A stretch of 64,000 nt of DNA, taken from NCBI GenBank assembly GCA_002269645.1, contig NIVC01000090.1, positions 248,001 to 312,000 on the forward strand, given 5' to 3'. A program made the position numbers and the translations under genes. The notes below the pieces were generated by a model. It was not told the origin of the DNA and did not search any database. It saw only the letters and a list, made by a program, of their open reading frames with translations. Origin of the DNA: Macrostomum lignano (lineage: Eukaryota). Shown in pieces: positions 241 through 61,350 of this stretch; within the stretch, counting starts at the first letter, position 1, and each line of letters starts with the position of its first letter.

Positions 241-1181
241 CTAGGCAAGCTGAATCCGTTCTCCTGACACTATTTTCTTGAGATCGTCCAGCCTCCTCCT
301 GGCGAAGTCGTCCAAGTTGTTGAACCTCTCGAACTCGGACACCGCGGCGTCGACGGCTGCGACGTCGCGAGCGTCGGTAGCCGAAGCCAGCGACCTCACC
401 AGCGAGAGCTCGTCGGTGTCCTTGAACGATCCGCACAGCACAGCCAGCTGCTCCGCCTTCTCGCCGACTCCCGCAGCTCCTGAGCACAGCAGGCACAGAC
501 AGCTCTTGGCCAGGTGGTCCTTGGCTCCGAAGCTCAACAGACTGTGCTGCTCAGCCGACACTCCCAGATCCTCAAACACTGCGGCTGCCTCTGTCAGCCT
601 CCCGCAGTCCGCCGTCAACTCCGCGGCCTTGGCGCGGCTGCCCGCAGCGCTGGCCGGACTGTCCTCGCCGCTCCAGAAGTCCGCCGCTCTCACGTAGGCA
701 CCGATGGCCTCCTCGACTTGCTGAGATGAAGCCAGCAGGTCTCCAGCCTCCTCCAGCTGTCTGGCAGCGATGCTGAACTGGCCCTGCTCTGCGTACATCT
801 CGGCCGCTTGCTGCAGGCACCGCACGGCCTTCGGTCTCGTGTCTGGCAGCTTGCGGTAGCAGTTCGCAGCCTCCGAGTAATTGTTGGCCGCATCGAGCTC
901 GCATCGCCTCTGCTTTGAGAACTGCTCGGCCGCGGCTTCGAATGCCTGCCCAGCTTCGCGCCAGTTTTTAGATATTTTAAGTCTGTTTCCTTTGTCAAGC
1001 AAATGTTCAGATCCTTTGGGCTCTTTGGTGAATGAATAATATAAACCTATGCCAGTTACTGCAGCAACGGACAAAGCCGCCGCCTTTTTAACTTCATGTA
1101 ATTTGTGGTTTCTTAGATTTCCATTGTTCTGAAGTTCGCGAGTTTGGATTTCCGCGGCAGCTTGGACAATTGAACTGAATT
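241..1181 (-). CDS. alpha-SNAP-like protein copy 1 (group A); probable terminal coding exon with a TM-like segment; start codon not in this exon
   Basis: SNAP motifs W.EAG.AF..AA, DAANNYSEAANCYRK, GQFSIAARQ, ADFWSGEDSPASA, LLSFGAKD and LDDF align by eye to alpha-SNAP (NWSAAGNAF, GRFTIAAKH, ADYYKGEES, LLKYSAKD, LDQW). The ORF-track start at 1074 is TTG. The frame stays open upstream to a TTTTAG acceptor at 1182/1181 (phase 1), adding ...HEVKKAAALSVAAVTGIGLYYSF. Stop TAG at 241-243. Confidence 0.8.
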
Positions 1182-1463
1182 CTAAAATACAAACAAAAAT
1201 CGAGTTGAATTTTTAGCTCCAACCTTATTGTTTCCACCTCCAATCTACGGGTAGGAGCTAGTATATCGTTAGCTAATTTTAATCCTGGATATTAGAATAA
1301 CTAGATATGTCTTTCCCAATTAAAGTAGTAAAAAAGTAAAGCGTCTACTCTTTTTTTAGTAGTTTGACTGCGCAAAGTCACATGAATTAATTGTGGCAGC
1401 TAAAACTTCCTTCCCCTTCTCCGACTTTACGGCCCCAGAAGATATAGCGTTAAGAATAAATTA

Positions 1464-1745
1464 AGACGGACGAAACTCAGTCTAGGGGCAGGCTCAATCT
1501 GGCTCAGCCAATGAGAGAGCAGTAGGGAGAGAGGTTTAAGTCAGACGGACGAAACTCAGCCTAGGAGGACAGGCCCAGTCTGGCTCAGCCAATGAGAGAG
1601 CAGTAAGGAGAGAGATTTGAGTCAGACGGACGAAACTCTGCCTAGGGGGACAGGCCCAGTCTGGCTAAGCCAATGAGAGAGCAGTCAGGAGAGATGTTAA
1701 AGTCAGACACAAGCGGGCAAGTGGAAAGCCAGACTGTTTATCGGC
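1464..1745. repeat. three ~80-bp tandem units containing CAGCCAATGAGAG; dispersed repeat also at 23100-23285
   Basis: agacggacgaaactc recurs at 1464, 1543 and 1624. The terminal aagtcagacacaagc..ggaaag..actgttta is shared with the 23100-23285 copy. Confidence 0.85.
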
Positions 1746-1789
1746 ATGGCTGGGTAGCTCGCAATGAGCTACCCTTGGCTGGGTAGCTC

Positions 1790-2370
1790 GGTCCTCTCTC
1801 ACCTCTCTCCTCGGTCCTCTCTCACCTCTTCTCTCGGTCCTCTCTCACCTCTTTCTCTCGGTCCTCTCTCACCTCTTCTCTCGGTCCTCTCTCACCTCTT
1901 CTCTCGGTCCTCTTTCACCTCTTCTCTCGGTCCTCTCTCACCTCTTTCTCTCGGTCCTCTCTCACCTCTTCTCTCGGTCCTCTCTCACCTCTTCTCTCGG
2001 TCCTCTCTCACCACTTCTCTCGGTCCTCTTTCATCTCTTCTCTCGGTCCTCTTTCATCTCTTCTCTCGGTCCTCTTTCATCTCTTCTCTCGGTCCTCTCT
2101 CACCTCATTTCTCGGTCCTCTCTCACCTCTTTCCTCGGTCCTTCTCACCTCATTTCTCGGTCCTCTCTCACCTCTTTCCTCGGTCCTTCTCACCTCATTC
2201 TCTATTTTGTCCTTTTCCTCTCTTCCCCCTCTCTTACCTCTCATTTCTCATCTTCTCTTCTCCTCTCTCGTCTTTCTTTTCGCCTCTCCTTTCTTATCTT
2301 CTCTCTGATCTCTTCTCTTATTTCCTTTCTTATTCTCTCTCACATCTAATTATCTCTCATCTTTATCGCA
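1790..2370. repeat. CT-rich low-complexity minisatellite (ctctcggtcctctctcacctctt-like units)
   Basis: Directly visible pyrimidine-rich tandem units degrading into CT-rich sequence. Confidence 0.9.
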
Positions 2371-3746
2371 GTCATTAGCTAGTAGGCTTTTTTACTGGCC
2401 CTCTAGGTAAAAATGTTTGCCAAGCCTTAGTGTAAAATGTTTTAAGCTTAGCAAAAAAAGTCAGTTTTCTTACGAGATGCGCGCGTGAAAATGAAAATGC
2501 TCCACCGGTGCCACAGCCATTGCAATAGGCCACCGGAAGGTATTAGCGAAATTGAAGCCAAACGGGTTGTTTCTCCAGGTGGTTTACTGTGTGACTGGCC
2601 CATCTTATTCAAGTCGAGCATGAATGACAGAAATTGCTATAAAAAGAAAACATGATTTACCAGTACTGAAAGCTGTAACTTTCTTTGACCTTCTTTGAGC
2701 CCAGAAGTTCTTGACTCAAGTGCTATAATTTAAATAGTAATTAAGAAAATGTAAACTGTTACAGGTTAAAAGTACTAAAAAATAATAATTACTCGCCCTA
2801 GTCACTTAGTAGTCATTCACTCAAGATTTGATATAAAAGTTAGCTAACTCAATCGTAGCATTATATACTTACTTTAATAATATTCTAATAACAAACTACA
2901 CTTCAAAGCAGAATGATTTGTCTAAGAGGAGAACAACAAAAAAATTCAAGTAACCAACAGTCTTTGTTAATATAATACTGCAAATAATTTTGAAATGGGT
3001 GTAACATACAGTGTGTAACAGTAATACGCATGTCCGTGTAAACAGTACATGTAAAAATGTGATATTAAATCGATGATCAACATCTTGAAATACATGTAGT
3101 TGGAAGCACTGACTCGCAAACACAGAAAATATGACCAATTAACCATTTTGAAAATGGAATAGTGAATTTTACATCCGACGGAAAACTAGGAATTTTGGAA
3201 ATTGTCTTTTACATAATATAATAGCTTAAAGTTTAAAGCTGCGTAAAACCTTATTGTAAAACACACAGGAACAAATACAAACAGTTGGTTGGTCATGGAA
3301 GTGAAACTGTTTGTTGATAAATATGCTTCTTTAAAAAAGGCAAAAATGATGATAAAAAACATCCAAAATGAATCTCAGCAATGGCGTATTTAGGAGCAAA
3401 TTAAGAAATAAAAAATAGCCACTGCTAAAAATTGTTTAGTCTATGCATAATAACAAAAAATCCTTGATTTTTACTACATAATTCACTTCGGACTCAAATG
3501 AAGACATTTTGTAGAAATTAATAAATTCTTGAAGATATCATTCAAAAGGCTACACATCATCATGGAAAGGACGGCAAAAAAAGCGCCCGAGTTTTTTACT
3601 CCTTAAAGGACACTAAACTTAATTAATGCAGTGCAATACTCATAAGCACCTGTTTTATTTATTGAAAGTGAACCGATGTAAAACAACTATGATAAATATC
3701 AGACAAGCCAATTCAAGTTCCAATATCTTCCAAAGAGAATTAAAGT

Positions 3747-4799
3747 TTAGGTCAGCGGAATTATCTCTCTGGCTGCGATTTTCCTCAACTGGTCCAGCCT
3801 CCTCCTGGCGAAGTCGTCCAAGTTGTTGAACCTCTCGAACTCGGACACCGCGGCGTCGACGGCTGCGACGTCGCGAGCGTCGGTAGCCGAGGCCAGCGAA
3901 CTCACCAGCGAGAGCTCGTCGGTGTCCTTGAACGAGCCGCACAGCCCAGCCAGCTGCTCCGCCTTCTCGCCGACTCCCGCAGCTCCTGAGCACAGCAGGC
4001 ACAGACAGCTCTTGGCCAGGTGGTCCTTGGCTCCGAAGCTCAACAGACTGTGCTGCTCAGCCGATACTCCCAGATCCTCAAACACCGCGGCTGCATCTGC
4101 CAGCCTCCCGCAGTCCGCCATCAACTCTGCGGCCTTGGCGCGGCTGCCCGCAGCGCTGGCCGGACTGTCCTCGCCGCTCCAGAAGTCCGCCGCTCTCAAG
4201 TAGGCATCGATGGCCTCCTTGACTTGCTGAGATGAAGCCAGTAGGTCTCCAGCCTCCTCCAGCTGTCTGGCAGCGCTGGCCGGACTGTCCTCGCCGCTCC
4301 AGAAGTCCGCCGCTCTCAAGTAGGCATCGATGGCCTCCTTGACTTGCTGAGATGAAGCCAGCAGGTCTCCAGCCTCCACCATCTGTCTGGCAGCGATGCT
4401 GAACTGGCCCTGCTCTGCGTACATCTCGGCCGCTTGCTGCAGGCACCGCACGGCCTTCGGTTTTGTGTCTGGCAGCTTGCGGTAGCAGTTCGCAGCCTCC
4501 GAGTAATTGTTGGCCGCATCGAGCTCGCGTCGCCTCTGCTTTGAGAACTGCTCGGCCGCGGCTTCGAATGCCTGTCCAGCTTCGTGCCAGTTTTGATGAA
4601 GCTTCAGCTGGTCGCCCTGCTGCACTGAGTGTTCAGGGTTGGCTTCAGAATTTGTAGAGAGCCGCCGCGGTGTCCATGTTGCAGAGTTACTCAGCTGCTG
4701 GTACTGTGTATCCCCCTGTTGTTGATAGCAACAGCAATATACAGCAACGACAATTGCAATGATTAGAACAACGAGAATGACGAAGACAATGGCAGACAT
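3747..4799 (-). CDS. alpha-SNAP-like protein copy 2 (group A); N-terminal signal-anchor plus CCC motif; internal 40-aa duplication
   Basis: True ATG at 4799 with an in-frame stop just upstream. MSAIVFVILVVLIIAIVVAVYCCCY precedes the SNAP domain. Stop TAA at 3747-3749. Minus-strand AATAAA near 3655-3665. Confidence 0.88.
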   Translation of the reverse strand: MSAIVFVILVVLIIAIVVAVYCCCYQQQGDTQYQQLSNSATWTPRRLSTNSEANPEHSVQQGDQLKLHQNWHEAGQAFEAAAEQFSKQRRRELDAANNYSEAANCYRKLPDTKPKAVRCLQQAAEMYAEQGQFSIAARQMVEAGDLLASSQQVKEAIDAYLRAADFWSGEDSPASAARQLEEAGDLLASSQQVKEAIDAYLRAADFWSGEDSPASAAGSRAKAAELMADCGRLADAAAVFEDLGVSAEQHSLLSFGAKDHLAKSCLCLLCSGAAGVGEKAEQLAGLCGSFKDTDELSLVSSLASATDARDVAAVDAAVSEFERFNNLDDFARRRLDQLRKIAAREIIPLT

Positions 4800-5092
4800 C
4801 GCTGCGTTGGCAGTTTAAAATTGTGTTTCAAATGCTGCTGTATCTCCTGAACGGTAGTATAGTCTGTCCAAGAGCTTTTTAGTGCCTCATAAATTGAAGA
4901 TTATTACTGGTACACGGACTAAAATATTTTAATACAAGTTGTATGGTACGGCAGCTCAGCCTTTTCAAAGCATCCTGGTGCTCTACTAACGTAGAATGAT
5001 AACTTAACACTGTAAAATAATAAGTTGATTACTACCTGACATTGATATAATATCTGTGTGGTCCGTGAGCTATGTGACTTGTAATCTACAGG

Positions 5093-5547
5093 AATCTGTA
5101 TTGTATTGGATCCGTGATTCACTGGAAATGTATTGTATTGGATCCGTGATTCACTGGAAATGTATTGTATGGGATCTGTGATTCACTGGAAATGTATTGT
5201 ATGGGATCCGTGATTCACTGGATATGTATTGTATGGGATCTGTGATTCACTGGAAATGTATTGTATGGGATCTGTGATTCACTGGAAATGTATTGTGTGG
5301 GATCTGTGATTCACTGGAAATGTATTGTGTGGGATCTGTGATTCACTGGATATGTATTGTATGGGATCTGTGATTCACTGGAAATGTATTGTATGGGATC
5401 TGTGATTCACTGGAAATGTATTGTATTGGATCTGTGATTCACTGGAAATGTATTGTGTGGGATCTGTGATTCACTGGAAATGTATTGTGTGGGATCTGTG
5501 ATTCACTGGAAATGTATTGTGTGGGATCTGTGATTCACTGGATATGT
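5093..5547. repeat. 32-bp minisatellite, ~14 copies (gtgattcactggaaatgtattgtatgggatct)
   Basis: gtgattc recurs every 32 bp from 5114 to 5530; no unique spacers. Confidence 0.95.
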
Positions 5548-6547
5548 AATACAGTACATGAGGATGTGGATCTGGGTTCTGTAAACTTTAGAACCTAGGA
5601 GCTCTAGTTGAGAAAATTGCTACCTTGAAAATATTTTTTGAAACTAGAAAAACCTAAAATCCTAAATGAACACTTCAAAATTATATCTTGGCTGAATAGT
5701 TAGTAATTAGCAGACAATAATCCATACACAGAATATTAATAGCTTGCAGGCCAGCAACAATTACTGGTACAACGAACAAATAAGTTCTGCTTCTAAAATT
5801 TTCGACCATTTGAAATGTAAAAACGTTTTGAGAAAGTGAACCATGAGTAACTGGTAAAACAGCCGAAATGTGTTGGCATAGATACTGACAAAAAGCTGAT
5901 AATTCAGCCAAAAATAGCGTATAAAAACACATATAGCAAGTCGAATGAAAATCTAAAATAAAAATTAAGGCAATGATGTTTCCGTTGGCTTAAAAGCAGA
6001 AGTACTTTTATAGAATGTATTTCTGGTCTGATCGTCATCTTCCATTCTGTCCTATTAGATGACGGACTGACCAAGTGCAGGGTAGCCTGGTAGAAGATGA
6101 TAATTCTTAACTGTCCTAAGATCGGCAGCACTGACATGCTTAGTGGATGACGATGTCAGGTCGCTACGAGACTTGCAACAGTAGGAATATCAGTGCCTTT
6201 AAAATTTAGGCAGAAAAAAGTTTTAATTTGTTACGACCACAAAAAAGATAAATATCGGCAGGAATATATAGATTTCTGATAACACAGTGATTTATCGTAA
6301 GTAGTCGTAACAAAAACAGAGGCAGATATACAAACCCAAAAGGTTGCGGTACTCAAGCCACGGGATTCACCCATAGGCCACGCTGTTAACACTGACGTTG
6401 ACGCTCAGTTAAACAAAAAAATTTATTTCATCAGCTGCTTTAGGAGCTATAATAAACTTAGAGGAAACTTTAAGACTCCAAAATCAATACAAAACAAGAA
6501 CATACTAATACTCATAAATATTTCAGGCTCAGTGACAAGCACCGCAA

Positions 6548-7615
6548 CTACTGCAGCTGCACCCCGCCAGAAGCCACAAACTGCCTCAGCTGGTGCAGTC
6601 TCCTCCTGGCGAAGTCGTCCAAGTTGTTGAACTTCTCGAACTCGGACACCGCGGCGTCGACGGCTGCGACGTCGCGAGCGTCGGTAGCCGAAGCCAGCGA
6701 CCTCACCAGCGAGAGCTCGTCGGTGTCCTTGAACGAGCCGCACAGCCCAGCCAGCTGCTCCGCCTTCTCGCCGACTCCCGCAGCTCCTGAGCACAGCAGG
6801 CACAGACAGCTCTTGGCCAGGTGGTCCTTGGCTCCGAAGCTCAACAGACTGTGCTGCTCAGCCGACACTCCCAGATCCTCAAACACCGCGGCTGCCTCTG
6901 TCAGCCTCCCGCAGTCCGCCATCAACTCCGCGGCCTTGGCGCGGCTGCCCGCAGCGCTGGCCGGACTGTCCTCGCCGCTCCAGAAGTCCGCCGCTCTCAC
7001 GTAGACATCGATCGCTTTTCTTTGTTCTTGAGATGCAGCCAGCAGGTCTCCAGCCTCCTCCAGCTGTCTGGCAGCGATGCGGAACTGGCCCTGCTCTGCG
7101 TACATCTCGGCCGCTTGCTGCAGGCACCGCACGGCGTTCGGTCTCGTGTCTGGCAGCTTGCGGTAGCAGTTCGCAGCCTCTGAGTAATTGTTGGCCGCAT
7201 CGAGCTCGCATCGCCTCTGCTTTGAGAACTGCTCGGCCGCGGCTTCGAATGCCTGTCCAGCTTCGTGCCAGTTTTGATGAAGCTTCAGCTGGTTGCCCTG
7301 CTGCAGAAGCTTGGCGGTGTCAGAGGTTCGCTGTAGGGCCGGCTGGGGCTGCGTCAGCCTGCTTGTTTCTTCATCATCTATAGGAAAGCAACACAGACAA
7401 ACGCCTATGGGTAACGTTAAATCTTCAGGTGACGTCATCCTGCTGGCTTCTTCATCTCTAGGAAAGCAACACGGACAAATGCAGCTCCAGCAGCTGTAGC
7501 AGCAGCCTTCAGGTGACGTTGTGCTGGTCTCTTTATCTCTAGGAAAGCAACACGGAAAAATGCAGCTCCAGCAGCTGCAGCACATTTCGCGAATGCAACT
7601 GCAGATGTTTCCCAT
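6548..7615 (-). CDS. alpha-SNAP-like protein copy 3 (group A); predicted N-myristoylated, Cys-rich (palmitoylated) N-terminus
   Basis: The track start at 7624 is TTG. The first ATG is at 7615, 3 nt after a TTGCAG acceptor, giving MGNICSC... followed by three CC(F)P[RI]D.E repeats and the SNAP domain. Stop TAG at 6548-6550. Confidence 0.87.
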   Translation of the reverse strand: MGNICSCIREMCCSCWSCIFPCCFPRDKETSTTSPEGCCYSCWSCICPCCFPRDEEASRMTSPEDLTLPIGVCLCCFPIDDEETSRLTQPQPALQRTSDTAKLLQQGNQLKLHQNWHEAGQAFEAAAEQFSKQRRCELDAANNYSEAANCYRKLPDTRPNAVRCLQQAAEMYAEQGQFRIAARQLEEAGDLLAASQEQRKAIDVYVRAADFWSGEDSPASAAGSRAKAAELMADCGRLTEAAAVFEDLGVSAEQHSLLSFGAKDHLAKSCLCLLCSGAAGVGEKAEQLAGLCGSFKDTDELSLVRSLASATDARDVAAVDAAVSEFEKFNNLDDFARRRLHQLRQFVASGGVQLQ

Positions 7616-7884
7616 TACCTGCAAGTAGAAAACAGTCTTTAATATGTAATTTTTTGTGTGTCTGCTTTTGCCGCTTTAAGTTTTAAGCTAATTCGTGCAA
7701 GGTGGGAAATGCATGAAATATCGTTGGGTATCTATCAGTACAGCTTCAGCAACTGGCCTACTCAGTTACTACAATAAAAAAACAGTAAAAAGATGGGATC
7801 ACAAATAAGTAATTGATAATATAAATAATAATAATATTTTATTTTTTGACTTGGATCTGCATTTTACTATAGGGGAATTTATTG

Positions 7885-8335
7885 GATTGTGAGGTATGGG
7901 ATGGAGATTGTGAGGTATGGGTTGGAGATTTTGAGATATGGGATGGAGATTGTGAGGTATGGGATGGAGATTGTAAGGTATGGGATGGAGATTGTGAGAT
8001 ATGGGATGTAGATTGTGAGATATGAGATGGAGATTGTGAGGTATGGGATGGAGATTGTGAGGTATGGGATGGAGATTGTGAGGTATGGGATGGAGATTGT
8101 GAGGTATGGGATGGAGATTGTGAGGTATGGGATGGAGATTGTGAGATATGGAATGTAGATTGTGAGATATGAGATGGAGATTGTGAGGTATGGGATGGAG
8201 ATTGTGAGGTATGGGATGGAGATTGTGAGGTATGGGATGGAGATTGTAAGGTATGGGATGGAGATTGTGAGGTATGGGATGGAGATTTTTGAGAAATGGG
8301 ATGGAGATTTTGAGATATGGGATGGAGATTGGGAG
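7885..8335. repeat. 21-bp minisatellite, ~21 copies (gagattgtgaggtatgggatg)
   Basis: Directly visible tandem units. Confidence 0.95.
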
Positions 8336-8879
8336 ACATGACTATTCTATTTCCTACATTGATTGTGCAATTTTCCAGTGAATTTGTGTTTTTATAGACT
8401 AGCAAATAAAGTTTTTAAATAGGTCTATATCGCGTGCAGAGAGACGGATTTTAATAACGTTGGTTTTGCGCAAAGCAAAGATCCTTTAACGGTGGAAAAT
8501 TGTACATACAGGTTAAACCAGTAAAGAATTTAATGAATTTGAAAAAAGCAGATCATAATTGACGAAATGGACAACGAAGTGTGGAAAATAAGCAAATAAA
8601 TGAAAACTGAAACCAAAATGTTGCTACCTACAGTAATAGCGGTTAAAAAAAGAGAAAACTCAGTCAATGAAATCATATTTAGTTATTACTGAATAAATAT
8701 GCGCAGAAACTATAACTAATTCGGGTATGTTTAACGTAAAATAAAATAAAAGCTATTGTTAAAATTGACCTACTTTAAAAAGCTTGTACAGGGACTTCTA
8801 GAAATATTACCAGGTGGACTGGAAGCTTGAAATAATGCTACGCCTTTAACGAAATCCTCTCACAACCAGCGCTGAGACA

Positions 8880-9152
8880 ATTCTGCGCACTCCGCTGACT
8901 CTTCACCACACACAAGCGCGCCAATACTGTACTCAGGCACGGCACTCATACACACGCTCACACAGGGTGTACATCGGCCCTGACTTTCTAATCGTCAGGC
9001 ATGTGCAGTCTCTGTGCCTTGGGGGTTGGCCCTCATGGCTGTGAATCGCACGACAACCTGCATTTTCGTGCACACAAGCCCCAAATGAATGTGTTTGCGT
9101 ACTCAATCGAACCAGGGGTCGTGGGCGTTTATTACCGCTGAGAAGCTCCGCC
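8880..9152 (-). mobile_element. degenerate tRNA-derived SINE-like element, same family as 11640-12010
   Basis: Shares the core ctgtgccttgggggttggccctca and flanks with 11730-11880. B-box-like GGTTCGATT on the minus strand near 9105-9113. Confidence 0.6.
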
Positions 9153-10325
9153 TTAGCACCTTCACTTGGGGATCAAAGGACTCACTTGGTCTAGCCAAAT
9201 CCAAAACACTGCTTGGGGCGGTAATTTTCAGATATAAGAAATAACAGTAGCCACCACATTGGCGTCAACATGGAGCCATGTTGCCTTCTAGCTTCCAGTC
9301 CAACTCTCTGCTGCTACTTCCAGAAGTCCTTGGCTAGTAAATGATTTGAAAAGCAAGCCATACAAATGGATAGAGCGCTATATTAGACAGACCATGTAAA
9401 CAGTAACTAGAGAAGACACTGGGACTAAAAGCAAATTTTAAGACGCAAGAAAAACAAAAGTACCGGCTGTTAAATAGTAAAGCATTGCTAAATTGACACA
9501 GATTGATTATTTTCCTGTTTGATAATACCAGTACGAGCGTAATTTTCAATTTTTGCTAGTTCTCTAATGTCCAGTCTAGATGTCCATGTTCAAGTCAATT
9601 TGCACTTTTTCTGTTCTCACGCCCTATTTTTTCCTACACGGGTGTCCGCTGGTGGTAAAAACGATGGTGGTAGGGGCAGAGAGGAGAGAGATAAGCGTTG
9701 AGTTAAGAACCGCGGCAGCCAATCAGAATGGAGCGAGGAGAGAGACTAAAATATATGTCTACACAAGGAGAGAGAGAATTTGAGTGTTCCTGCACTAAAG
9801 CAGTTTAAGCCAAACAGACTGAAATAGAAAGTCGGCCTAAAATAAACAAACAAACTTTATAATCGGGTGTTGTGTTGGTTAATCTAAGATTGGGGCGACT
9901 AACAAATTCCAGATTAGCATAATAAACTTTGCAATAGAAATTGGACTCATAACTTTGCGAAAAATACCGTTTCGAGGAAAATGAAATAAACAATTACATG
10001 AAAAAATTACATTGCACAAAACATATGTTGGTAAATTCAAACCACCGTATAATTCAAATGATAAATTGATTTTGTCGACAGCAACATATGGAAGAAGATT
10101 CCTACAATTTCCACGAAGTTGGCATTATTGCTGAGCCTTGTACTTCGCAGATTTATAAACCAGTAGAATACTTATAATAAACTGCAACAGCAGAATCATA
10201 CAATAGAAAGCTGGAGATTTCTCGCCTTATCATCATTATGGCTTTGGCATGCAAACTTAAACCTCCAAGACATAGAAGGATTGAGTCGAGTCCAATGCCG
10301 AATATATTAATACTCAGGCTGCTAC

Positions 10326-11411
10326 TTACAGTAACTGCACACTGTCACCAGTAGCTAAAAACTGTCTCAGCTGGTCCAGCCTCCTCCTGGCGAAGTCGTC
10401 CAAGTTGTTGAACCTCTCGAACTCGGACACCGCGGCGTCGACGGCTGCGACGTCGCGAGCGTCGGTAGCCGAAGCCAGCGACCTCACCAGCGAGAGCTCG
10501 TCGGTGTCCTTGAACGAGCCGCACAGCACAGCCAGCTGCTCCGCCTTCTCGCCGACTCCCGCAGCTCCTGAGCACAGCAGGCACAGACAGCTCTTGGCCA
10601 GGTGGTCCTTGGCTCCGAAGCTCAACAGACTGTGCTGCTCAGCCGACACTCCCAGATCCTCAAACACTGCGGCTGCCTCTGTCAGCCTCCCGCAGTCCGC
10701 CATCAACTCCGCGGCCTTGGCGCGGCTGCCCGCAGCGCTGGCCGGACTGTCCTGGCCGCTCCAGAAGTCCGCCGCTCTCAAGTAGGCATCGATGGCGTTT
10801 CTTTGATCTTGTGATGCAGCCAGCAGGTCTCCAGCCTCCTCCAGCTGTCTGGCAGCGATGCGGAACTGGCCCTGCTCTGCGTACATCTCGGCCGCTTGCT
10901 GCAGGCACTGCACGGCCTTCGGTCTCGTGTCTGGCAGCTTGCGGTAGCAGTTCGCAGCCTCCGAGTAATTGTTGGCCGCATCGAGCTCGCGTCTTCTCTG
11001 CTTCGAGAAGCGATCTGCAACAGTCTCAAACTTTTTGCCAGCTTCAAGCCAGTTTTTATCACGTTTGTTCCTGTTGCCATCGTCGATTAATCGCTGCTGC
11101 GATCCGTGCGTTTGACGCTTTCTAAACAGCAGAAAGTACAGTACCAGCAGCAGCAATACTACCAAGATGCACAGAAACCCGACAAAGATATAGGCTGTAT
11201 GTAATTTCGCTGGTGGCACAGTTGGCTGAGCTGTTGGAGCTGATGTAGTCGTGTCGATAGTAGTTGTGTTTGAATAGGACGGATTTGACGTCGTTAGGAC
11301 ACTCGTCGTTGGTCCGGTCGTACTGTTGGCATCAGCAGCAGCGGCACTTTCCACTGCTGCCATTGCGGTACTATTTGAACTTTTGATTTCGCTGCTATTC
11401 GAAGTCTCCAT
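10326..11411 (-). CDS. alpha-SNAP-like protein copy 4 (group A); receptor-like: Ser/Thr/Pro-rich stalk, TM helix, cytosolic SNAP domain
   Basis: The track start at 11486 is TTG; the first ATG is at 11411. The frame is open back to a TTTTTTCAG acceptor at 11471/11470 (phase 1), so an upstream coding exon is possible. Stalk has NSS/NST/NTT sequons. TM is AYIFVGFLCILVVLLLLVLYFLLF followed by RKR. Stop TAA at 10326-10328. Confidence 0.87.
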   Translation of the reverse strand: METSNSSEIKSSNSTAMAAVESAAAADANSTTGPTTSVLTTSNPSYSNTTTIDTTTSAPTAQPTVPPAKLHTAYIFVGFLCILVVLLLLVLYFLLFRKRQTHGSQQRLIDDGNRNKRDKNWLEAGKKFETVADRFSKQRRRELDAANNYSEAANCYRKLPDTRPKAVQCLQQAAEMYAEQGQFRIAARQLEEAGDLLAASQDQRNAIDAYLRAADFWSGQDSPASAAGSRAKAAELMADCGRLTEAAAVFEDLGVSAEQHSLLSFGAKDHLAKSCLCLLCSGAAGVGEKAEQLAVLCGSFKDTDELSLVRSLASATDARDVAAVDAAVSEFERFNNLDDFARRRLDQLRQFLATGDSVQLL

Positions 11412-11639
11412 TCTTGATTCTTGCGAGTTATTAAACAGATGTTCTTTAGTATGCTTTGGGTGAAAATGCACTGAAAAAAGGGTCAATAGTGATATTGAAA
11501 ATAGCGTTAAAATGAAGTTGGAACATAAAGATATTATCTGTTCCTAAGCTCTTTAAACATGGAACGGGAACATATTCTAGTACTTTGTTTCTTTGATTAA
11601 CACTGGCAGCTTGTAGGAAGTGAGGCAGACGTTACGTTA

Positions 11640-12010
11640 AGGTTTTAGAGGCATAGGGCTGTGTGCACCCTGGCGCACTTTAAGCGACATTGTCACACAA
11701 CCGGCGAGAGGCATTACTGCCCCCATTCCGCCGACTCCCCTGAGCAGGTGCACAAGCGCGGGGATACGTACGCAGTCATACGCACAGGCACACACTCACA
11801 GGAGTGTACAGCGGCCCTAACTTTGTTTATCGTTAGGCATGTACACTTCACTGTGCCTTGGGGGTTGGCCCTCAAGCTGGGCGTTAATTGCACGAGCAGA
11901 GCCAAGCCGAGGTTCCAATTTAGCTCCAATATTAATGTGACTGCACTTGGAATCGAGCCTGGGCCGCTGGCACACCAGAGCGCCGCGCTGGACCACTGGG
12001 CTACGTCTCC
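11640..12010 (-). mobile_element. tRNA-derived SINE-like element
   Basis: Minus-strand A box TAGCCCAGTGG (11993-12003) and B-box-like GGCTCGATTCC (11949-11959). The body is shared with 8880-9152. A terminal hairpin ggctgtgtg...cacacaacc lies near 11655-11702. Confidence 0.7.
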
Positions 12011-12702
12011 CAACCAATTGCGTAAATTTTTCTGGCGAAAATTCAAACCTGCAGATATGTTTTGCAACTTAGATGAAACGAGCACAGTATATCGAGGCAT
12101 TTAAACAACTTTTGGGTCAACTTTTGAATGTAGAAGATTAGAACAACAGTTTCTTTTTTAAACTATTAATTTCTACAACGATTGAGACAATTCTTTGCGT
12201 ACGGCTAAAATGAAAAAACCGACAAATTTTTTGCTAGGAAGCAAGCAATCTAAGAAATAGCACAATAATTAGCTACATGGCAACGATCGATGCTAGTTTT
12301 CTTTGTCGGGCTCAAGACGGAATAGGCATGATGCGGCACTTAAATTTCACAGCAGCATAACCAGCTACAGCTTAAAATGATTCAATAAAGCAAGCAGACT
12401 GAAAAAATATGCAAGTGAAATTACGTACCTTTTGAATTCTGGAGACAAAACAAGCAAGCTACCGATATATCACAATGCTATACAACTTGTAAGGATGATG
12501 TTCACAGCTTTCTACTAATTCGGTCTTATATAAGTAACGCCACTAATTAAATATAGAGTAAAAAATCACTGGCATAAAATTGACAGTCTATAACAAACAA
12601 GGATATTAGAACCTACGTTACCTTGAAATAACTATTCAACTTTCGTATGCACACTAAAATGTGTTTCTCAATAAAATTTGAATCGCACAAAACCCTTTCC
12701 AA

Positions 12703-13725
12703 CTACTGCAGCTGCACCCCTCCAGTAGCCACAAACTGCCTCAGCTGGTCCAGCCTCCTCCTGGCGAAGTCGTCCAAGTTGTTGAACCTCTCGAACTCGG
12801 CCACCGCGGCGTCGACGGCTGCGACGTTGCGAGCGTCGGTAGCCGAAACCAGCGACCTCACCAGCGAGAGCTCGTCGGTGTCCTTGAACGAGCCGCACAG
12901 CCCAGCCAGCTGCTCCGCCTTCTCGCCGACTCCCGCAGCTCCTGAGCACAGCAGGCACAGACAGCTCTTGGCCAGCTGGTCCTTGGCTCCGAAGCTCAAC
13001 AGACTGTGCTGCTCAGCTGACACTCCCAGATCCTCAAACACCGCGGCTGCCTCTGCCAGCCTCCCGCAGTCCGCCGTCAACTCCGCGGCCTTGGCGCGGC
13101 TGCCCGCGGCGCTGGCCGGACTGTCCTCGCCGCTCCAGAAGTCCGCCGCTCTCACGTAGACATCGATGGCCTCCTCGACTTGCTGAGATGCAGCCAGCAG
13201 GTCTCCAGCCTCCTCCAGCTGTCTGGCAGCGATGCTGAACTGGCCCTGCTCTGCGTACATCTCGGCCGCTTGCTGCAGGCACCGCACGGCCTTCGGTCTC
13301 GTGTCTGGCAGCTTGCGGTAGCAGTTCGCAGCCTCCGAGTAATTGTTGGCCGCATCGAGCTCGCATCGCCTCTGCTTTGAGAACTGCTCGGCCGCGTTTT
13401 CGAATGCCCTCCCAGCTTCTCTCCAAGTTTTATCGGCTTTGTGTTTGATTCCTTTGGCAACCAAGTTCTCCGCTGTTTCTCCTGTTGCAATTTTCTTGAC
13501 TTGATATAGAAGCCAAAGCATCAATGATGATAGCAGCACTGCTAACCACCATGAGAAAACAACCGAAATTTCATCAGTAGTTGTCGTAGCCCGATGATGT
13601 TCTAGTTCAGTATAGTTGCAGCTCTTTGTTAGATTAGAACTGCCTGATGAAGTATAACGGTAGTAGAGCTGTATGTATATGTGAACACAACTTGCGCTGG
13701 AGTTCTGTAGACGTCCAATTTTCAT
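12703..13725 (-). CDS. alpha-SNAP-like protein copy 5 (group A); short N-glycosylatable ectodomain plus TM
   Basis: ATG at 13725, 2 nt after a CTCACAG acceptor. Sequons NSS, NLT and NYT precede ISVVFSWWLAVLLSSLMLWLLY and the SNAP domain. Confidence 0.87.
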   Translation of the reverse strand: MKIGRLQNSSASCVHIYIQLYYRYTSSGSSNLTKSCNYTELEHHRATTTTDEISVVFSWWLAVLLSSLMLWLLYQVKKIATGETAENLVAKGIKHKADKTWREAGRAFENAAEQFSKQRRCELDAANNYSEAANCYRKLPDTRPKAVRCLQQAAEMYAEQGQFSIAARQLEEAGDLLAASQQVEEAIDVYVRAADFWSGEDSPASAAGSRAKAAELTADCGRLAEAAAVFEDLGVSAEQHSLLSFGAKDQLAKSCLCLLCSGAAGVGEKAEQLAGLCGSFKDTDELSLVRSLVSATDARNVAAVDAAVAEFERFNNLDDFARRRLDQLRQFVATGGVQLQ

Positions 13726-14850
13726 AGCTGTGAGACGCAGGTGGGAGCCGCGGTTTTAAAACAGAAAAATGGGAATGAAAATGGCAATAAAACGTTTTGA
13801 AGTGTTCTTTGATCTACGAGTACACCGACTGATGTTGAATGCTAAAAATGACCTGCTATACACTGAATATAGCTGTCAGCATAGCATCATCACCTTAACA
13901 AATATTCGTTAGATACAGATTCTGTCAAACTACGTAGCTCTAACCACGTGTTCAACTAATTTGTATTCTATTAAATGAGATCTGATAGAGGCGGCATTCT
14001 TATTTATTTTAAATAGAAAAATAAAATAAAGCATCCAGACACGAGTATTAGGGAGACGTGAACTAAAACAGTCTCATTCATTATAATCTACAAAATTTAA
14101 ATAAACAGCTGTCAAACAGGTTTAGTTAGAAACTTATTGTTAAAAATGTCATATTTACGTTTTTAAGCTGGAAGGTTAAAGAGCGCGGTCTATGTAAATT
14201 TGATAACTTGTTAAAATCAGCTGGAAAGTTTTTTAAAAATATTTTTCCACTAAACTTTGACACACGTTTTGTTCTGATGAAACGAATATTTTGAAGTTAA
14301 AAACAGTTTAACATGTCAGCCGGTTGCCTGCAAGACTGCTGGATGTTTCACAATACAAAGCGATGTTTTTACAACAAAGGTTATTTAATATGAAATCAAT
14401 GTCACCATGTAAAACACTTCGAAGTATAACAACACCTGTAGTTTAAAGTCAATACTAATGATAAAAAATATCTGAATTCGGCAAAAAATCAATAAAAAAG
14501 GATTGGAAAATGGATAAAAACCAGTTTACGAGTAAAAAGCAGAATTCCGCGCATTGGAAACTGAGAGATTGATCAATAATTAGTCTGATCCTCATGAAAC
14601 AGGCCGATTCCAGTTTTAATGTTTGTTAAGCAATGGATTACATATTGTGCATCAGATAGATAAAAAATTAAAATAACACACAACTAGGATTAGGACTACA
14701 TACATTTTTTTATTTAAAAAATGAACCTAAGTTATGATCAAAGTTATTTAAAACACGCTAATGTCTGGAAAACATTCACAAAACAGCCTTGCCAATGAAT
14801 AAAAAACAATCCGTCCGTAACTCTCTTCATTCGCCAAAAACCCTTTCCAT

Positions 14851-15810
14851 CTACTGCAGCTGCACCCCGCCAGAAGCCACAAACTGCCTCAGCTGGTGCA
14901 GCCTCCTCCTGGCGAAGTCGTCCAAGTTGTTGAACCTCTCGAACTCGGACACCGCGGCGTCGACGGCTGCGACGTCGCGAGCGTCGGTAGCCGAAGCCAG
15001 CGACCTCACCAGCGAGAGCTCGTCGGTGTCCTTGAACGAGCTGCACAGCCCAGCCAGCTGCTCCGCCTTCTCGCCGACTCCCGCAGCTCCTGAGCACAGC
15101 AGGCACAGACAGCTCTTGGCCAGCTGGTCCTTGGCTCCGAAGCTCAACAGACTGTGCTGCTCAGCCGACACTCCCAGATCCTCAAACACCGCGGCTGCCT
15201 CTGTCAGCCTCCCGCAGTCCGCCATCAACTCCGCGGCCTTGGCGCGGCTGCCCGCAGCGTTGGCCGGACTGTCCTCGCCGCTCCAGAAGTCCGCCGCTCT
15301 CAAGTAGGCACCGATAGCCTCCTCGACTTGCTGAGATGAAGCCAGCAGGTCTCCAGCCTCCTCCAGCTGTCTGGCAGCGATGCTGAACTGGCCCTGCTCT
15401 GCATACATCTCGGCCGCTTGCTGCAGGCACCGCACGGCCTTCGGTCTCGTGACTGGCAGCTTGCGGTAGCAGTTCGCAGCCTCCGAGTAATTGTTGGCCG
15501 CATCGAGCTCGCGTCGCCTCTGCTTTGAGAACTGCTCGGCCGCAGCTTCGAATGGCCGTCCAGCTTCACGCCAGTTTTGATGAAGCTTTAAACGATTTCC
15601 GTCTTGCACAAGCGATAAAGCTGTTCTGTTGCTCTGATCGGATATATTTAGAAGCATGTTCCATACCAATGGTACTATGGTACTATGAAAAAAGGTCCAT
15701 ACCAGCACTAATATGGTTTTTAATTTCTTCAGCAACCAGTAAACCAACAGTACGACCAATTCGCACAGACTTTGAGTTGGCTGAGGTTGGTTTTCAATGA
15801 ATGATTGCAT
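14851..15810 (-). CDS. alpha-SNAP-like protein copy 6 (group A); two N-terminal hydrophobic segments
   Basis: ATG at 15810, 7 nt after a CCCCTTTCAG acceptor. LVVLLVYWLL-KKLK-TILVLVWTFFHSTIVPLVW precedes the SNAP domain. Minus-strand AATAAA near 14708-14716. Confidence 0.88.
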   Translation of the reverse strand: MQSFIENQPQPTQSLCELVVLLVYWLLKKLKTILVLVWTFFHSTIVPLVWNMLLNISDQSNRTALSLVQDGNRLKLHQNWREAGRPFEAAAEQFSKQRRRELDAANNYSEAANCYRKLPVTRPKAVRCLQQAAEMYAEQGQFSIAARQLEEAGDLLASSQQVEEAIGAYLRAADFWSGEDSPANAAGSRAKAAELMADCGRLTEAAAVFEDLGVSAEQHSLLSFGAKDQLAKSCLCLLCSGAAGVGEKAEQLAGLCSSFKDTDELSLVRSLASATDARDVAAVDAAVSEFERFNNLDDFARRRLHQLRQFVASGGVQLQ

Positions 15811-20580: not shown

Positions 20581-21310
20581 TGGGCACCCCTGTCTCTTGG
20601 TGGCACCCCTGTCTCTTGGTGGCACCCCTGTCTCTTGGTGTCACCCCTGTCTCTTCGTGGCACCCCTGTCTCTTGGTGGCACCCCGGTCTCTTGGTGGCA
20701 CCCCTGTCTCTTGGTGTCACCCCTGTCTCTTGGTGTCACCCCTGTCTCTTGGTGCCACCCCTGTCTCTAGGTGGCACCCCTGTCTCTTGGTGGCACCCCT
20801 GTCTTGGTGCCACCCCTGTCTCTTGGTGGCACCCCTGTCTCTTGGTGTCACTCCTGTCTGTCTCTTGGTGGCACCCCTGTCTCTTGGTGGCACCCCTGTC
20901 TCTTGGTGGCACCCCTGTCTCTTGGTGTCACTCCTGTCTGTCTCTTGGTGGCACCCCTGTCTCTTGGTGTCACTCCTGTCTGTCTCTTGGTGTCACCCCT
21001 GTCTCTTGGTGTCACCCCTGTCTCTTGGTGCCACCCCTGTCTCTTGGTGGCACCCCTGTCTCTTGGTGGCACCCCTGTCTTGGTGCCACCCCTGTCTCTT
21101 GGTGCCACCCCTGTCTCTTGGTGGCACCCCTGTCTCTTGGTGGCACCCCTGTCTTGGTGCCATTCCTGTCTCTTGGTGGCAACCCTGTCTCTTGGTGTCA
21201 CTCCTGTCTATCTCTTGGTGGCACCCCTGTCTCTTGGTGGGCGCCCCTGTCTTTCGGTTGGCGCCCCTGTCTCTTGGTGGGCGCCCCTGTCTTTCGGTTG
21301 GCGCTCCTGT
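20581..21310. repeat. 19-bp minisatellite (gcacccctgtctcttggtg) with variant units
   Basis: gcacccc recurs at 20584, 20603, 20622 and onward. Confidence 0.95.

Positions 21311-61261: not shown

Positions 61262-61350
<89 letters not shown>

What the first reader, a model, noticed from the sequence alone, without database searches (positions are those of the whole stretch)
241..15700. The TM helix sits where alpha-SNAP has its membrane-inserting hydrophobic loop
Established: alpha-SNAP binds membranes through the F27/F28 loop (SQSFFSGLF), about 20 residues before AANMFK. Seen: group A copies lack that N-terminal region. In copies 1, 4, 5 and 6 the aromatic C-terminal end of the hydrophobic segment (LYYSF, YFLLF, LWLLY, LVWNMLL) lies roughly 15-22 residues before the equivalent G[NI].[LNH]K motif. 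Group B keeps a loop-like aromatic stretch at this spacing (SSKWFSNFS in copy 7). Inference: a transient membrane dip was converted into a permanent anchor with similar geometry.
Basis: partly seen in the sequence, partly recalled or inferred. Interest (0 to 1): 0.7.

Follow-up and report, generated by a model that had tools for sequence, protein, structure and literature searches.

The report
Membrane-anchored alpha-SNAP-like gene family in flatworm
A flatworm (Macrostomum lignano) carries a tandem cluster of nine genes for relatives of the normally soluble vesicle-fusion cofactor alpha-SNAP. Most have swapped the protein's membrane-dipping tip for a permanent membrane anchor, but the anchors are unrelated to each other and sit at the old loop position in only about half the copies.

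Summary
The window is Macrostomum lignano DNA. It holds nine minus-strand genes with a SNAP domain (PF14938, E 1e-45 to 1e-55): seven of "group A" and two of "group B".

- Group A lacks helix alpha1 and the F27/F28 loop.
- In copies 1, 4, 5 and 6 a hydrophobic segment ends 14-18 residues before the GNxLK motif (= alpha-SNAP A49-K53). That maps to alpha-SNAP positions 31-35, the C-terminal edge of the loop.
- Only copies 4 and 5 have clearly TM-grade helices there; copies 1 and 6 are marginal.
- The two strongest TM helices (copies 2 and 8) lie 36 and 51 residues upstream.
- Copy 3 has no TM. It starts with a myristoylation-like site followed by a Cys-rich (palmitoylation-like) string.
- Group B keeps W265/F266 at exactly the F27/F28 spacing and has a TM hairpin about 180 residues upstream.

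The anchor modules are not detectably homologous to each other. They join a 94-97% identical, GC-rich SNAP block right at the motif, so a gradual loop-to-TM conversion with conserved geometry is not shown.

My best reading is a lineage-specific family of N-terminally anchored, cytosol-facing SNAP domains. They probably still bind SNAREs but have lost key NSF-coupling residues. This resembles a natural version of engineered TM-Sec17. Nothing here has been tested experimentally.

The parts
241..1181 (-). Copy 1 (group A), exon 2: end of the N-terminal module, weakly hydrophobic segment AAALSVAAVTGIGLYYSF (window 1030-1083), and SNAP block
   Evidence: PF14938 E 2.5e-52. AG acceptor at 1183-1182. 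Matches NCBI PAA91313.1 = P0003. Hessa sum +3.5, which is marginal.
2474..2603 (-). Copy 1, exon 1: MGQSHSKPP... (N-myristoylation-type start) plus the hydrophobic stretch LLQWLWHRWSIFIF
   Evidence: Peptide located in the window. GT donor at 2473-2472. The gene model is P0003.
3747..4799 (-). Copy 2 (group A): N-terminal TM (residues 4-22, window 4734-4790) followed by CCC, a 36-residue linker, then a SNAP block with a 120-bp internal tandem duplication (4150-4395)
   Evidence: Hessa sum -5.8; period 120, 2.0 copies, 97% matches.
6548..7615 (-). Copy 3 (group A): no TM. It starts MGNICSC and has a duplicated Cys-rich string (CCSCWSCIFPCCFPRD / CCYSCWSCICPCCFPRD), i.e. myristoylation- and palmitoylation-like motifs
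   Evidence: no hydrophobic segment; 81-bp repeat at 7423-7582. PF14938 E 3e-50.
10326..11411 (-). Copy 4 (group A): Ser/Thr-rich N-terminal domain with 4 N-glycosylation sequons, TM (ORF residues 102-121, window 11124-11183), RKRQ, and 15 intervening residues before GNRNK
   Evidence: (Hessa sum -6.2).
12703..13725 (-). Copy 5 (group A): 54-residue N-terminal domain with 3 sequons, TM residues 55-74 (window 13504-13563), and 17 intervening residues before GIKHK
   Evidence: Hessa sum -1.7. AlphaFold2 gives helix 49-81, a break at 82-84, then helix 85-97. Foldseek matches alpha-SNAP/Sec17 in 20S complexes at rmsd 2.1-2.8 A.
14851..15810 (-). Copy 6 (group A): hydrophobic region LCELVVLLVYWLLKKLKTILVLVWTFFHSTIVPLVWNMLL (residues 15-54, window 15649-15768), and 16 intervening residues before GNRLK
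   Evidence: Hessa sum +2.6, marginal. A YWLLKKLK motif is shared weakly with copy 7.
16609..18291 (-). Copy 7 (group B): two TM-grade segments (residues 29-47 and 66-84, window 18040-18207), an ADDQTTK-repeat linker, the loop-like KWFSNFSTDFTWY (window 17464-17502), and a SNAP domain with a 26-residue insert
21507..22583 (-). Copy 8 (group A): N-terminal domain with 2 sequons, TM residues 40-58 (window 22410-22466), a 51-residue linker predicted to be a helical stalk continuous with alpha2, and SNAP block
   Evidence: Hessa sum -3.9. AlphaFold2 gives helix 38-67, a break at 68-72, then helix 73-115.
24255..26585 (-). Copy 9 (group B): about 26 copies of a 17-residue repeat (PVTEDPTTKAKGQLGQQ), the loop-like GWRWL, and a SNAP domain. 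No TM lies in the ORF and no upstream TM exon was found

Best explanation
The region is a lineage-specific tandem array in Macrostomum lignano. It encodes alpha-SNAP-derived proteins that have been turned from soluble, peripherally binding factors into permanently membrane-attached ones.

Architecture. Each gene joins a conserved SNAP block to a different N-terminal anchoring module. The block runs from the C-terminal half of helix alpha2 to the C-terminus. Across group A it is homogenised by gene conversion. The anchoring modules are of four kinds:
- a single-pass TM with a short, probably glycosylated exoplasmic N-terminus and a cytosolic SNAP domain (c4, c5, c8, and probably c2);
- a hydrophobic hairpin (c7, perhaps c6);
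- a myristoylation-type start plus a weak hydrophobic segment (c1);
- a myristoylation-type start plus a Cys-rich, palmitoylation-type string (c3).

Why the overlap with the loop position. The anchor is always at the N-terminal tip, which is the membrane-proximal end of SNAP in the 20S complex. The coincidence in c1, c4, c5 and c6 follows from truncating the domain at alpha2 and fusing an anchor directly to it. It does not require the loop itself to have evolved into a helix.

Inferred, not shown. The cytosolic domain still lies along membrane-anchored SNARE bundles in the normal polarity. R116 and the acidic NSF-N-domain contact patches are lost while the penultimate Leu is kept. The proteins therefore probably act as resident SNARE binders or regulators with altered or weak coupling to NSF, and the different N-termini send them to different membranes or cell types.
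For: Fold and identity:
- PF14938 in all nine copies.
- alpha-SNAP is the best PDB sequence hit at E 2e-28, against 6e-5 for gamma-SNAP.
- AlphaFold2 models have pLDDT 87-88, and Foldseek top hits are alpha-SNAP/Sec17 chains inside 20S complexes (TM-score 0.78-0.83 normalised by target length, rmsd 2.1-2.8 A over 253 columns).

Anchors:
- TM-grade segments in c2, c4, c5, c7 and c8, far above background.
- There are more K/R residues on the C-terminal than on the N-terminal side of the TM in c4, c5 and c8. There are 9 N-glycosylation sequons in the 173 residues N-terminal of the TMs, against 1 in the 249-residue SNAP block.
- MG-x-x-x-S starts in c1 and c3.

The N-terminal modules are real coding sequence:
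- The frames are open where shuffled sequence rarely is (P 0.000-0.009 for five of the seven group A copies and for both group B copies).
- Against a second, syntenic array (L001, NIVC01000684.1) the modules differ at 1.07% of sites with 0 gap columns. Intergenic DNA differs at 3.06% with 160 gap columns (Fisher P = 4e-7).

Modular origin:
- DNA identity of 94-97% starts at the motif and ends at the stop codon.
- The N-terminal modules show no mutual similarity.
- GC3 is 74-79% in the block against 32-56% in the modules.

Constraint: dN/dS is 0.36-0.79 among group A blocks, and dN is significantly below dS (P = 1e-3 to 7e-5).

Functional residues:
- Kept: K53, K94, K122->R, K167, L197, L198, Y200->F, D204, K208 and L294 in all nine copies, and K203 in group A.
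- Lost: R116->Q, K163->G/S, D217, E249, E253, and the acidic tail DEED(290-293).
- Residue roles come from PMC6457932 and PMC6130971.

Precedent: TM-Sec17 works and bypasses the apolar loop (PMC5540461).
Against: - There is no expression, localisation or binding data. I found no literature on this family.
- TM calls rest on simple hydrophobicity scales, and c1 and c6 are marginal.
- For c6, the charge bias around the long hydrophobic segment would put the SNAP domain on the wrong side of the membrane if that segment spans it.
- The family is only weakly constrained. dN/dS is about 1 for the block between the two arrays, though this rests on few changes and is confounded by gene conversion. One copy in the second array carries a premature stop.
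- R116 is Q in all nine copies, and R116A leaves only 2% of disassembly activity. SNARE binding may therefore also be altered.
- c9 has no anchor in its ORF.
- I could not confirm that a canonical alpha-SNAP exists in M. lignano (the hit list is truncated).
Confidence: 0.65

Rival explanations
1. The alpha-SNAP membrane-dipping loop was converted in place into a TM helix. The loop-to-domain geometry was preserved so that canonical SNARE/NSF (20S) function continues from a fixed anchor.
For: - In c1, c4, c5 and c6 the hydrophobic segment ends at alpha-SNAP-equivalent positions 31-35.
- The linker from that end to the conserved part of alpha2 is 5-9 residues, against 8 in alpha-SNAP.
- The penultimate Leu is kept in all copies.
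- TM-Sec17 is functional.
- Gene conversion of the block could hide an old common TM-bearing ancestor. c6 and c7 share YWLL[KR]KLK.
Against: - The N-terminal modules are not homologous to each other, and the homology and GC boundary at the motif is sharp.
- Spacing is 36 and 51 residues in c2 and c8. c8 has a predicted 25-residue stalk helix.
- c3 has no TM, and group B has both a loop and a distant TM.
- R116 and the acidic NSF-binding patches are lost.
- Foldseek alignments that include the TM helix rise to rmsd 9-10 A, so the TM helix does not sit on alpha1.
Confidence: 0.2
2. A neofunctionalised scaffold. The SNAP fold has been reused as a membrane-tethered TPR-like adaptor for non-SNARE partners, as HAP40 is a SNAP-fold protein that binds huntingtin. 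On this view the position of the anchor has nothing to do with the alpha-SNAP loop.
For: - Only about 28% identity to alpha-SNAP, and a 400-bit gap to the nearest relatives outside M. lignano.
- R116, K163 and the acidic NSF contact residues are lost.
- dN/dS is high.
- HAP40 appears among the structural matches.
Against: - Most residues of the concave SNARE-contact face (K53, K94, R122, K167, L197, L198, F200, K203, D204, K208) and the penultimate Leu are conserved across both groups, although dS between groups A and B is saturated.
- alpha-SNAP and Sec17 are much better matches than HAP40 or gamma-SNAP.
- An anchor at the membrane-proximal tip is the orientation SNARE binding needs.
Confidence: 0.2
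3. The hydrophobic N-termini are accidental. They would be read-through or de novo ORF extensions from T-rich flanking DNA on decaying gene copies, with no selected anchoring function.
For: - The N-terminal modules have ordinary genomic GC content (39-51%).
- Random frames reach Kyte-Doolittle >= 1.6 in 27% of cases.
- One copy in the second array is a pseudogene.
- The block's dN/dS is about 1 between the two arrays.
Against: - The modules are three times more conserved than intergenic DNA between the two arrays and have no indels (P = 4e-7).
- The frames are open with P <= 0.009 in most copies.
- The conserved block has no ATG before residue ~65 of the block, so translation must start inside the modules.
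- TM-grade segments are about 40 times enriched over background.
- The sequon and charge asymmetry fits one coherent topology.
Confidence: 0.08

Closest known systems
alpha-SNAP / Sec17 (canonical soluble NSF attachment protein, PF14938)
   Same: - Same fold: a twisted sheet of helical hairpins plus a C-terminal bundle, rmsd 2.1-2.8 A to chains in 20S complexes.
- Conserved: K53, K94, K122(R), K167, L197, L198, Y200(F), D204, K208 and the penultimate Leu in all nine copies, and K203 in group A.
- Membrane contact is at the N-terminal tip.
   Different: - No alpha1 and no F27/F28 loop in group A.
- Predicted permanent TM or lipid anchor instead of a transient dip.
- R116->Q, K163->G/S, and the acidic NSF-N-domain contact residues and the DEED tail are lost.
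- Only about 28% identity.
- Tandemly amplified.
Engineered TM-Sec17 (Vti1 TM fused to the Sec17 N-terminus; Song et al. 2017, PMC5540461)
   Same: An N-terminal TM anchor placed directly in front of the SNAP domain. In that experiment the anchor removed the need for an apolar loop when the SNAREs zipper fully.
   Different: - TM-Sec17 keeps the whole of Sec17, including alpha1 and the loop. The natural group A copies delete them.
- With incomplete zippering the loop was still needed in TM-Sec17, so loss of the loop may cost function.
- The natural copies also change the NSF-coupling residues.
Soybean Rhg1 resistance-type alpha-SNAPs (PMC6712407)
   Same: Tandemly amplified, atypical alpha-SNAP genes whose otherwise conserved C-terminal NSF-interaction residues are altered.
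   Different: - The Rhg1 proteins are soluble and full length, and they sit in a four-gene repeat unit.
- Their effect is dosage-dependent impairment of NSF function in nematode feeding sites.
- No membrane anchor is involved.
gamma-SNAP and HAP40 (other SNAP-fold proteins)
   Same: The same helical-hairpin fold appears among the structural matches.
   Different: They match much more weakly: gamma-SNAP at sequence E 6e-5 and HAP40 at Foldseek E 4e-7 or weaker, against about 4e-11 for alpha-SNAP. Neither is membrane-anchored.

Membership tests
alpha-SNAP/Sec17 family | SNAP domain fold (PF14938): helical-hairpin sheet plus C-terminal bundle | tested here: met
   Pfam E 1e-45 to 1e-55 for all nine copies. 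PDB phmmer E 2e-28 to alpha-SNAP. AlphaFold2 plus Foldseek give target-normalised TM-score 0.78-0.83 and rmsd 2.1-2.8 A.
alpha-SNAP/Sec17 family | N-terminal alpha1 - apolar loop (F27/F28; Sec17 F21/M22) - alpha2 | tested here: not met
   Group A starts within alpha2, and alpha1 and the loop are absent. Group B keeps a WF/aromatic stretch at the same spacing but has no recognisable alpha1.
alpha-SNAP/Sec17 family | SNARE-contact residues on the concave face (K122, K163, L197, L198, Y200, R116) | tested here: inconclusive
   Kept: K122->R, L197, L198, Y200->F, plus K53, K94, K167, K203 (group A) and K208. Lost: R116->Q in all nine copies and K163->G/S. Residue roles are from PMC6457932.
alpha-SNAP/Sec17 family | C-terminal NSF-coupling element (penultimate Leu; acidic C-terminal residues) | tested here: inconclusive
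   The penultimate Leu is invariant in all nine copies. The acidic DEED(290-293) is replaced by GGVQ, ERIQ, EIIP, GSVQ or STVE, and D217, E249 and E253 are mostly lost. The role of L294 and of the acidic patches is from my own knowledge (Barnard 1997; Zhao 2015) and was not re-read here.
alpha-SNAP/Sec17 family | Soluble cytosolic protein that binds membranes only peripherally | tested here: not met
   TM-grade segments are predicted in c2, c4, c5, c7 and c8, and lipidation-type motifs in c1 and c3. This is prediction only.
alpha-SNAP/Sec17 family | Binds SNARE complexes and recruits or stimulates NSF | not testable with these tools
   Needs biochemistry.
TM-anchored SNAP architecture (as in engineered TM-Sec17) | TM helix N-terminal to a cytosolic SNAP domain | tested here: met
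   c2, c4, c5 and c8 have one strong TM N-terminal of the domain. K/R residues are more numerous on the C-terminal side of the TM and the sequons lie on its N-terminal side. AlphaFold2 predicts these helices.
   The linear spacing fits in c1, c4, c5 and c6 (alpha-SNAP positions 31-35). It fails in c2 (36 residues), c8 (51 residues with a stalk helix) and c3 (no TM). The three-dimensional geometry cannot be measured because no coordinates are available.
Rhg1-type atypical alpha-SNAP | Tandem amplification plus altered C-terminal NSF-contact residues that impair NSF function | tested here: inconclusive
   Amplification and the altered C-terminus are seen. The effect on NSF is untestable here, and this is an analogy only.

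The most novel reading that the evidence does not exclude
Macrostomum has evolved a family of permanently membrane-resident SNAPs, something I found no natural precedent for. They would act largely independently of NSF-driven disassembly, as compartment- or cell-type-specific SNARE regulators that either promote fusion or protect SNARE complexes. The family would diversify by shuffling unrelated anchor modules onto a SNAP cassette that is kept uniform by GC-biased gene conversion.
Probability: 0.3. Interest if true: 0.75.

Novelty: new variant of a known kind. Interest (0 to 1): 0.55.

Why it matters
SNAPs are soluble by definition. Their transient membrane contact through the N-terminal apolar loop is central to current models of how alpha-SNAP/Sec17 speeds SNARE disassembly and promotes fusion.

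A natural family that swaps the loop for permanent anchors would be an evolutionary counterpart of the engineered TM-Sec17 experiment. It has several anchor types and several spacings. It would therefore offer ready-made variants for asking what the loop does beyond membrane recruitment.

The family is also a clean example of domain-cassette evolution: a conserved block homogenised by gene conversion, joined to non-homologous targeting modules.

If the proteins prove not to bind SNAREs, the family becomes a second case, after HAP40, of the SNAP fold being reused for something else.

Tried and rejected
- An exact look-up of copy 6 in public assemblies found nothing on record.
- The first word-indexed homologue search returned only M. 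lignano proteins and one weak hit.
- The exhaustive profile search found 1715 SNAP relatives, but with a gap from 561 bits to 168 bits after the M. lignano proteins. Among the best 150, only a Rhododendron gene model (P0010, a tandem-duplicated alpha-SNAP with an upstream exon) had an N-terminal TM. I treat it as a doubtful annotation and not as a relative.
- The nearest hits outside M. lignano are ordinary alpha-SNAPs of scattered eukaryotes.
- A search seeded with a tapeworm alpha-SNAP, meant to find the canonical M. lignano alpha-SNAP, listed none among its best 120 hits. This is inconclusive because the list is truncated.
- tblastn of every N-terminal module against the window found no paralogous similarity, apart from a weak c6/c7 motif.
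- No upstream TM exon was found for copy 9.
- Literature searches for natural TM-anchored SNAPs, or for this Macrostomum family, found nothing relevant.
- I looked for model coordinates to superpose on the 20S complex, and none are exposed.
- I considered that c8 keeps alpha1 plus an FF loop (VRKFFTRS). AlphaFold2 instead predicts one continuous helix through it, so I dropped that idea.

Full report
**What is there.** The window is genomic DNA of the free-living flatworm Macrostomum lignano. Proteins encoded here match NCBI entries BOX15_Mlig021756g2 and BOX15_Mlig027212g2 of assembly GCA_002269645.1. Nine ORFs lie on the minus strand between 241 and 26585. Each carries a SNAP domain (PF14938, E 1e-45 to 1e-55). 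Seven form group A (c1 to c6 and c8), with blocks 86-94% identical in protein. Two form group B (c7, c9), about 45% identical to group A over the block, with a 26-residue insert. By sequence the closest solved structures are alpha-SNAP chains of 20S complexes (E 2e-28). Sec17 scores 3e-15 and gamma-SNAP only 6e-5. AlphaFold2 models of c5 and c8 (pLDDT 87.7 and 86.6) superpose on alpha-SNAP/Sec17 chains in 20S complexes at rmsd 2.1-2.8 A over about 253 columns.

**Checking the observation.** I verified the alpha-SNAP numbering against PDB chains. F27/F28 sit in SQSFFSGLF, and A48-A49-N50-M51-F52-K53 is the AANMFK motif. The loop between alpha1 and alpha2 carrying F27/F28 is the published membrane-insertion site (PMC12923601, citing Winter et al. 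2009). In the phmmer and MAFFT alignments the G of G[NDI]x[LNH]K aligns with A49. Group A lacks alpha1 and the loop.

The residues just upstream of the motif still resemble the C-terminal half of alpha2, including an E at the E43 position in 6 of 9 copies. The linker between the hydrophobic end and this conserved stretch is 5-9 residues, against 8 in alpha-SNAP.

It needs four corrections.
1. Only c4 and c5 have TM-grade segments at this place (sums of the Hessa biological scale over 19 residues of -6.2 and -1.7). c6 (+2.6, with H, P and N inside) and c1 (+3.5) are marginal.
2. c1 is a two-exon gene. An upstream exon (2474-2603) is joined through a GT-AG intron (1182-2473) and begins MGQSHSKPP, a myristoylation-type start.
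3. In c2 (-5.8) the TM ends 36 residues before the motif. In c8 (-3.9) it ends 51 residues before it.
4. c3 has no hydrophobic segment. It begins MGNICSC and carries a duplicated Cys-rich string (CCSCWSCIFPCCFPRD), which points to lipid anchoring.

The group B statement is confirmed. In c7, W265/F266 lie exactly 22 and 21 residues before A287, as F27/F28 do before A49. c7 also has two TM-grade segments about 180 residues further upstream.

**More than chance.** TM-grade segments (Hessa sum <= -1.5) occur in 2 of 158 background stop-to-stop frames of 60-140 codons in this window. They occur in 4 of 7 group A N-termini (P about 9e-7). With the laxer Kyte-Doolittle cut-off the contrast is 27% against 5 of 7 (P = 0.017).

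**Are the N-terminal modules real coding sequence?**
- The frames are open where shuffles of the same sequence almost never are (P 0.000-0.009 for five of the seven group A copies and for both group B copies).
- The conserved block has no ATG until far inside the domain, so translation must begin in the modules.
- The database's own gene calls for c5 and c6 equal these ORFs.
- The best evidence comes from a second, syntenic array on contig NIVC01000684.1 (locus L001). It keeps the same modules for c3, c4, c5, c7 and c8.
- Between the two arrays the modules differ at 1.07% of sites with no gap columns. Intergenic DNA differs at 3.06% with 160 gap columns (Fisher P = 4e-7).

**Topology.** For c4, c5 and c8, K/R residues are more numerous on the C-terminal than on the N-terminal side of the TM. 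Nine N-glycosylation sequons lie in the 173 residues N-terminal of the TMs. None lie in the linkers, and one lies in a 249-residue SNAP block. This fits an exoplasmic N-terminus and a cytosolic SNAP domain. c7 fits a two-TM hairpin with both ends cytosolic. c6 is ambiguous.

**How the family is built.** Among group A copies DNA identity is 94-97% over about 700 bp. This stretch begins at the GNxLK motif and ends at or just after the stop codon. Flanks and N-terminal modules show no similarity. Composition jumps at the same boundary: the block has GC 61-64% and GC3 74-79%, while the modules have GC 39-51% and GC3 32-56%.

Synonymous divergence in the block is only 0.06-0.22, although the flanks are unalignable. 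The simplest account is concerted evolution of the block by GC-biased gene conversion. The conversion tracts would stop where homology stops.

The second array shows the reshuffling directly. Synteny with c6 starts exactly at the block boundary. The copy at the c6 position carries a c8-type TM module (MDNYLLLLVFFGGIIVSIYFAY) only 11 residues before GNQLK, and also a premature stop. Because the block is homogenised, the true age of the duplications is hidden. I cannot tell whether the TM modules were acquired independently or descend from one old TM that diverged beyond recognition. A weak shared motif, YWLL[KR]KLK, in c6 and c7 hints at some common ancestry.

**Geometry.**
- AlphaFold2 predicts for c5 a helix 49-81 that contains the TM (55-74), a three-residue break (GET), then the alpha2 remnant 85-97.
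- For c8 it predicts a TM helix 38-67, a short break, and one continuous helix 73-115. That amounts to a stalk of about 25 residues running into alpha2, with the KFF dipeptide inside the helix and not in a loop.
- Foldseek alignments that include the TM helix rise to rmsd 9-10 A, so the helix does not occupy the alpha1 position.
- Linear spacing and secondary structure already show that the anchor-to-domain geometry is not conserved across the family.

**Function-bearing residues** (roles from PMC6457932 and PMC6130971).
- Kept in all nine copies: K53, K94, K122 (as R), K167, L197, L198, Y200 (as F), D204, K208 and the penultimate Leu (L294).
- Kept in group A only: K203.
- Changed in all nine copies: R116 to Q (R116A leaves 2% of disassembly activity) and K163 to G or S.
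- Also lost or mostly lost: D217, E249 and E253, and the acidic DEED tail before the Leu. The role of these acidic patches and of L294 in NSF binding and stimulation is from my own knowledge (Zhao et al. 2015; Barnard et al. 1997).
- dN/dS among group A blocks is 0.36-0.79, and dN is significantly below dS (P = 1e-3 to 7e-5).
- dN/dS between groups A and B is 0.1-0.25, but dS is saturated there.
- Between the two arrays the block ratio is about 1. This rests on few changes and gene conversion confounds it.
- The domain is therefore constrained, but loosely.

**Interpretation.** Shown by the sequence:
- A lineage-specific tandem family of alpha-SNAP-derived domains.
- The domains are fused at their membrane-proximal N-terminal tip to diverse hydrophobic or lipidation-type modules.
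- These modules are themselves conserved as coding sequence.

Inferred:
- The proteins are permanently membrane-attached with the SNAP domain in the cytosol.
- They still lie along SNARE bundles.
- Their coupling to NSF is altered.

An engineered N-terminal TM anchor lets Sec17 dispense with its apolar loop when SNAREs zipper fully. It does not when zippering is incomplete (PMC5540461). This makes the architecture plausible, and it also predicts that the loop-less copies lack part of Sec17's fusion-promoting activity.

The positional overlap in four copies is real. It is better explained by truncation at alpha2 plus direct fusion of an anchor, and the rest of the family does not share it.

**Comparison with known systems.** The family passes the fold criterion for alpha-SNAP/Sec17. 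It fails the alpha1-loop-alpha2 criterion (group A) and the solubility criterion. It is mixed on SNARE- and NSF-contact residues.

I found no natural TM-anchored SNAP in the literature searches. Among the 150 best of 1715 profile hits, the only candidate was a doubtful Rhododendron gene model. A third M. lignano SNAP-like group (BOX15_Mlig015185, 287 residues, starting MASWFSKS, with no TM) is the nearest relative at 168 bits. The soybean Rhg1 alpha-SNAPs are an analogy for tandem amplification with an altered NSF-contact C-terminus (PMC6712407).

**Verdict.** I rate it a new variant of a known kind and of moderate interest. Everything rests on sequence and prediction.

Noticed in passing
window 4150-4395 (copy 2): A 120-bp tandem duplication (2.0 copies, 97% identical) repeats exactly 40 residues (AARQ..EDSPAS). 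That is one helix-turn-helix unit of the SNAP sheet. It would lengthen the SNARE-facing sheet by one hairpin while keeping the reading frame.
   Followed up: partly
window, block/module boundary of every group A copy (e.g. 15588-15600 in copy 6): Composition jumps sharply at this boundary. The SNAP block has GC 61-64% and GC3 74-79%, while the N-terminal modules have GC 39-51% and GC3 32-56%. The group B blocks have GC 51%. This fits GC-biased gene conversion acting on the seven-copy block. It also explains the long spurious ORFs in all frames over the block.
   Followed up: partly
L001 (NIVC01000684.1) 9600-10560: In the second, syntenic array the copy at the c6 position has a c8-type TM module with the stalk deleted, so the TM ends 11 residues before GNQLK. 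It also has a premature stop (FSKQR*), and it is annotated as a 185-residue fragment (PAA78525.1). The group B copy in that array is a c7/c9 hybrid.
   Followed up: partly
window 7370-7615 (copy 3 N-terminus; 81-bp repeat 7423-7582): A duplicated Cys-rich motif (CCSCWSCIFPCCFPRD / CCYSCWSCICPCCFPRD) follows an MGN start, and a third CLCCFP follows. It resembles cysteine-string palmitoylation clusters.
   Followed up: no
window 25220-26535 (copy 9) and 17672-17825 (copy 7): The group B linkers are coding minisatellites. Copy 9 has about 26 copies of a 51-bp unit (PVTEDPTTKAKGQLGQQ). Copy 7 has about 7 copies of a 21-bp unit (ADDQTTK). Both are probably disordered spacers between the N-terminus and the SNAP domain.
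   Followed up: no
window 1787-2203, 5097-5548, 7885-8335, 20583-21315: Non-coding minisatellites with periods of 23, 32, 21 and 19 bp lie between the SNAP genes, and one lies inside the copy 1 intron. The 19-bp array is much longer in the second array (L001 about 2170-4420). They produce the long low-complexity ORFs such as SPSHTSQ.
   Followed up: partly
window 53480-56887 (+) and 48774-49472 (+): There is an intact 1135-residue ORF of a non-LTR retrotransposon (endonuclease plus reverse transcriptase; PF03372, PF14529, PF00078). A separate RNase H fragment (PF00075) also lies here, in an AT-rich part of the window.
   Followed up: partly
window 60000-62200: This is a strongly strand-skewed, low-complexity stretch (GC skew 0.70, AT skew 0.60). 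It gives long Ser/Leu-rich pseudo-ORFs on the minus strand.
   Followed up: no
L002 (NIVC01000992.1) 6001-6864: A third M. lignano SNAP-like group (BOX15_Mlig015185g1-3, 287 residues) is intronless and has no anchor. It starts right at a loop-like MASWFSKS and has an insert at the same place as group B. It may represent the soluble, alpha1-less intermediate form.
   Followed up: partly
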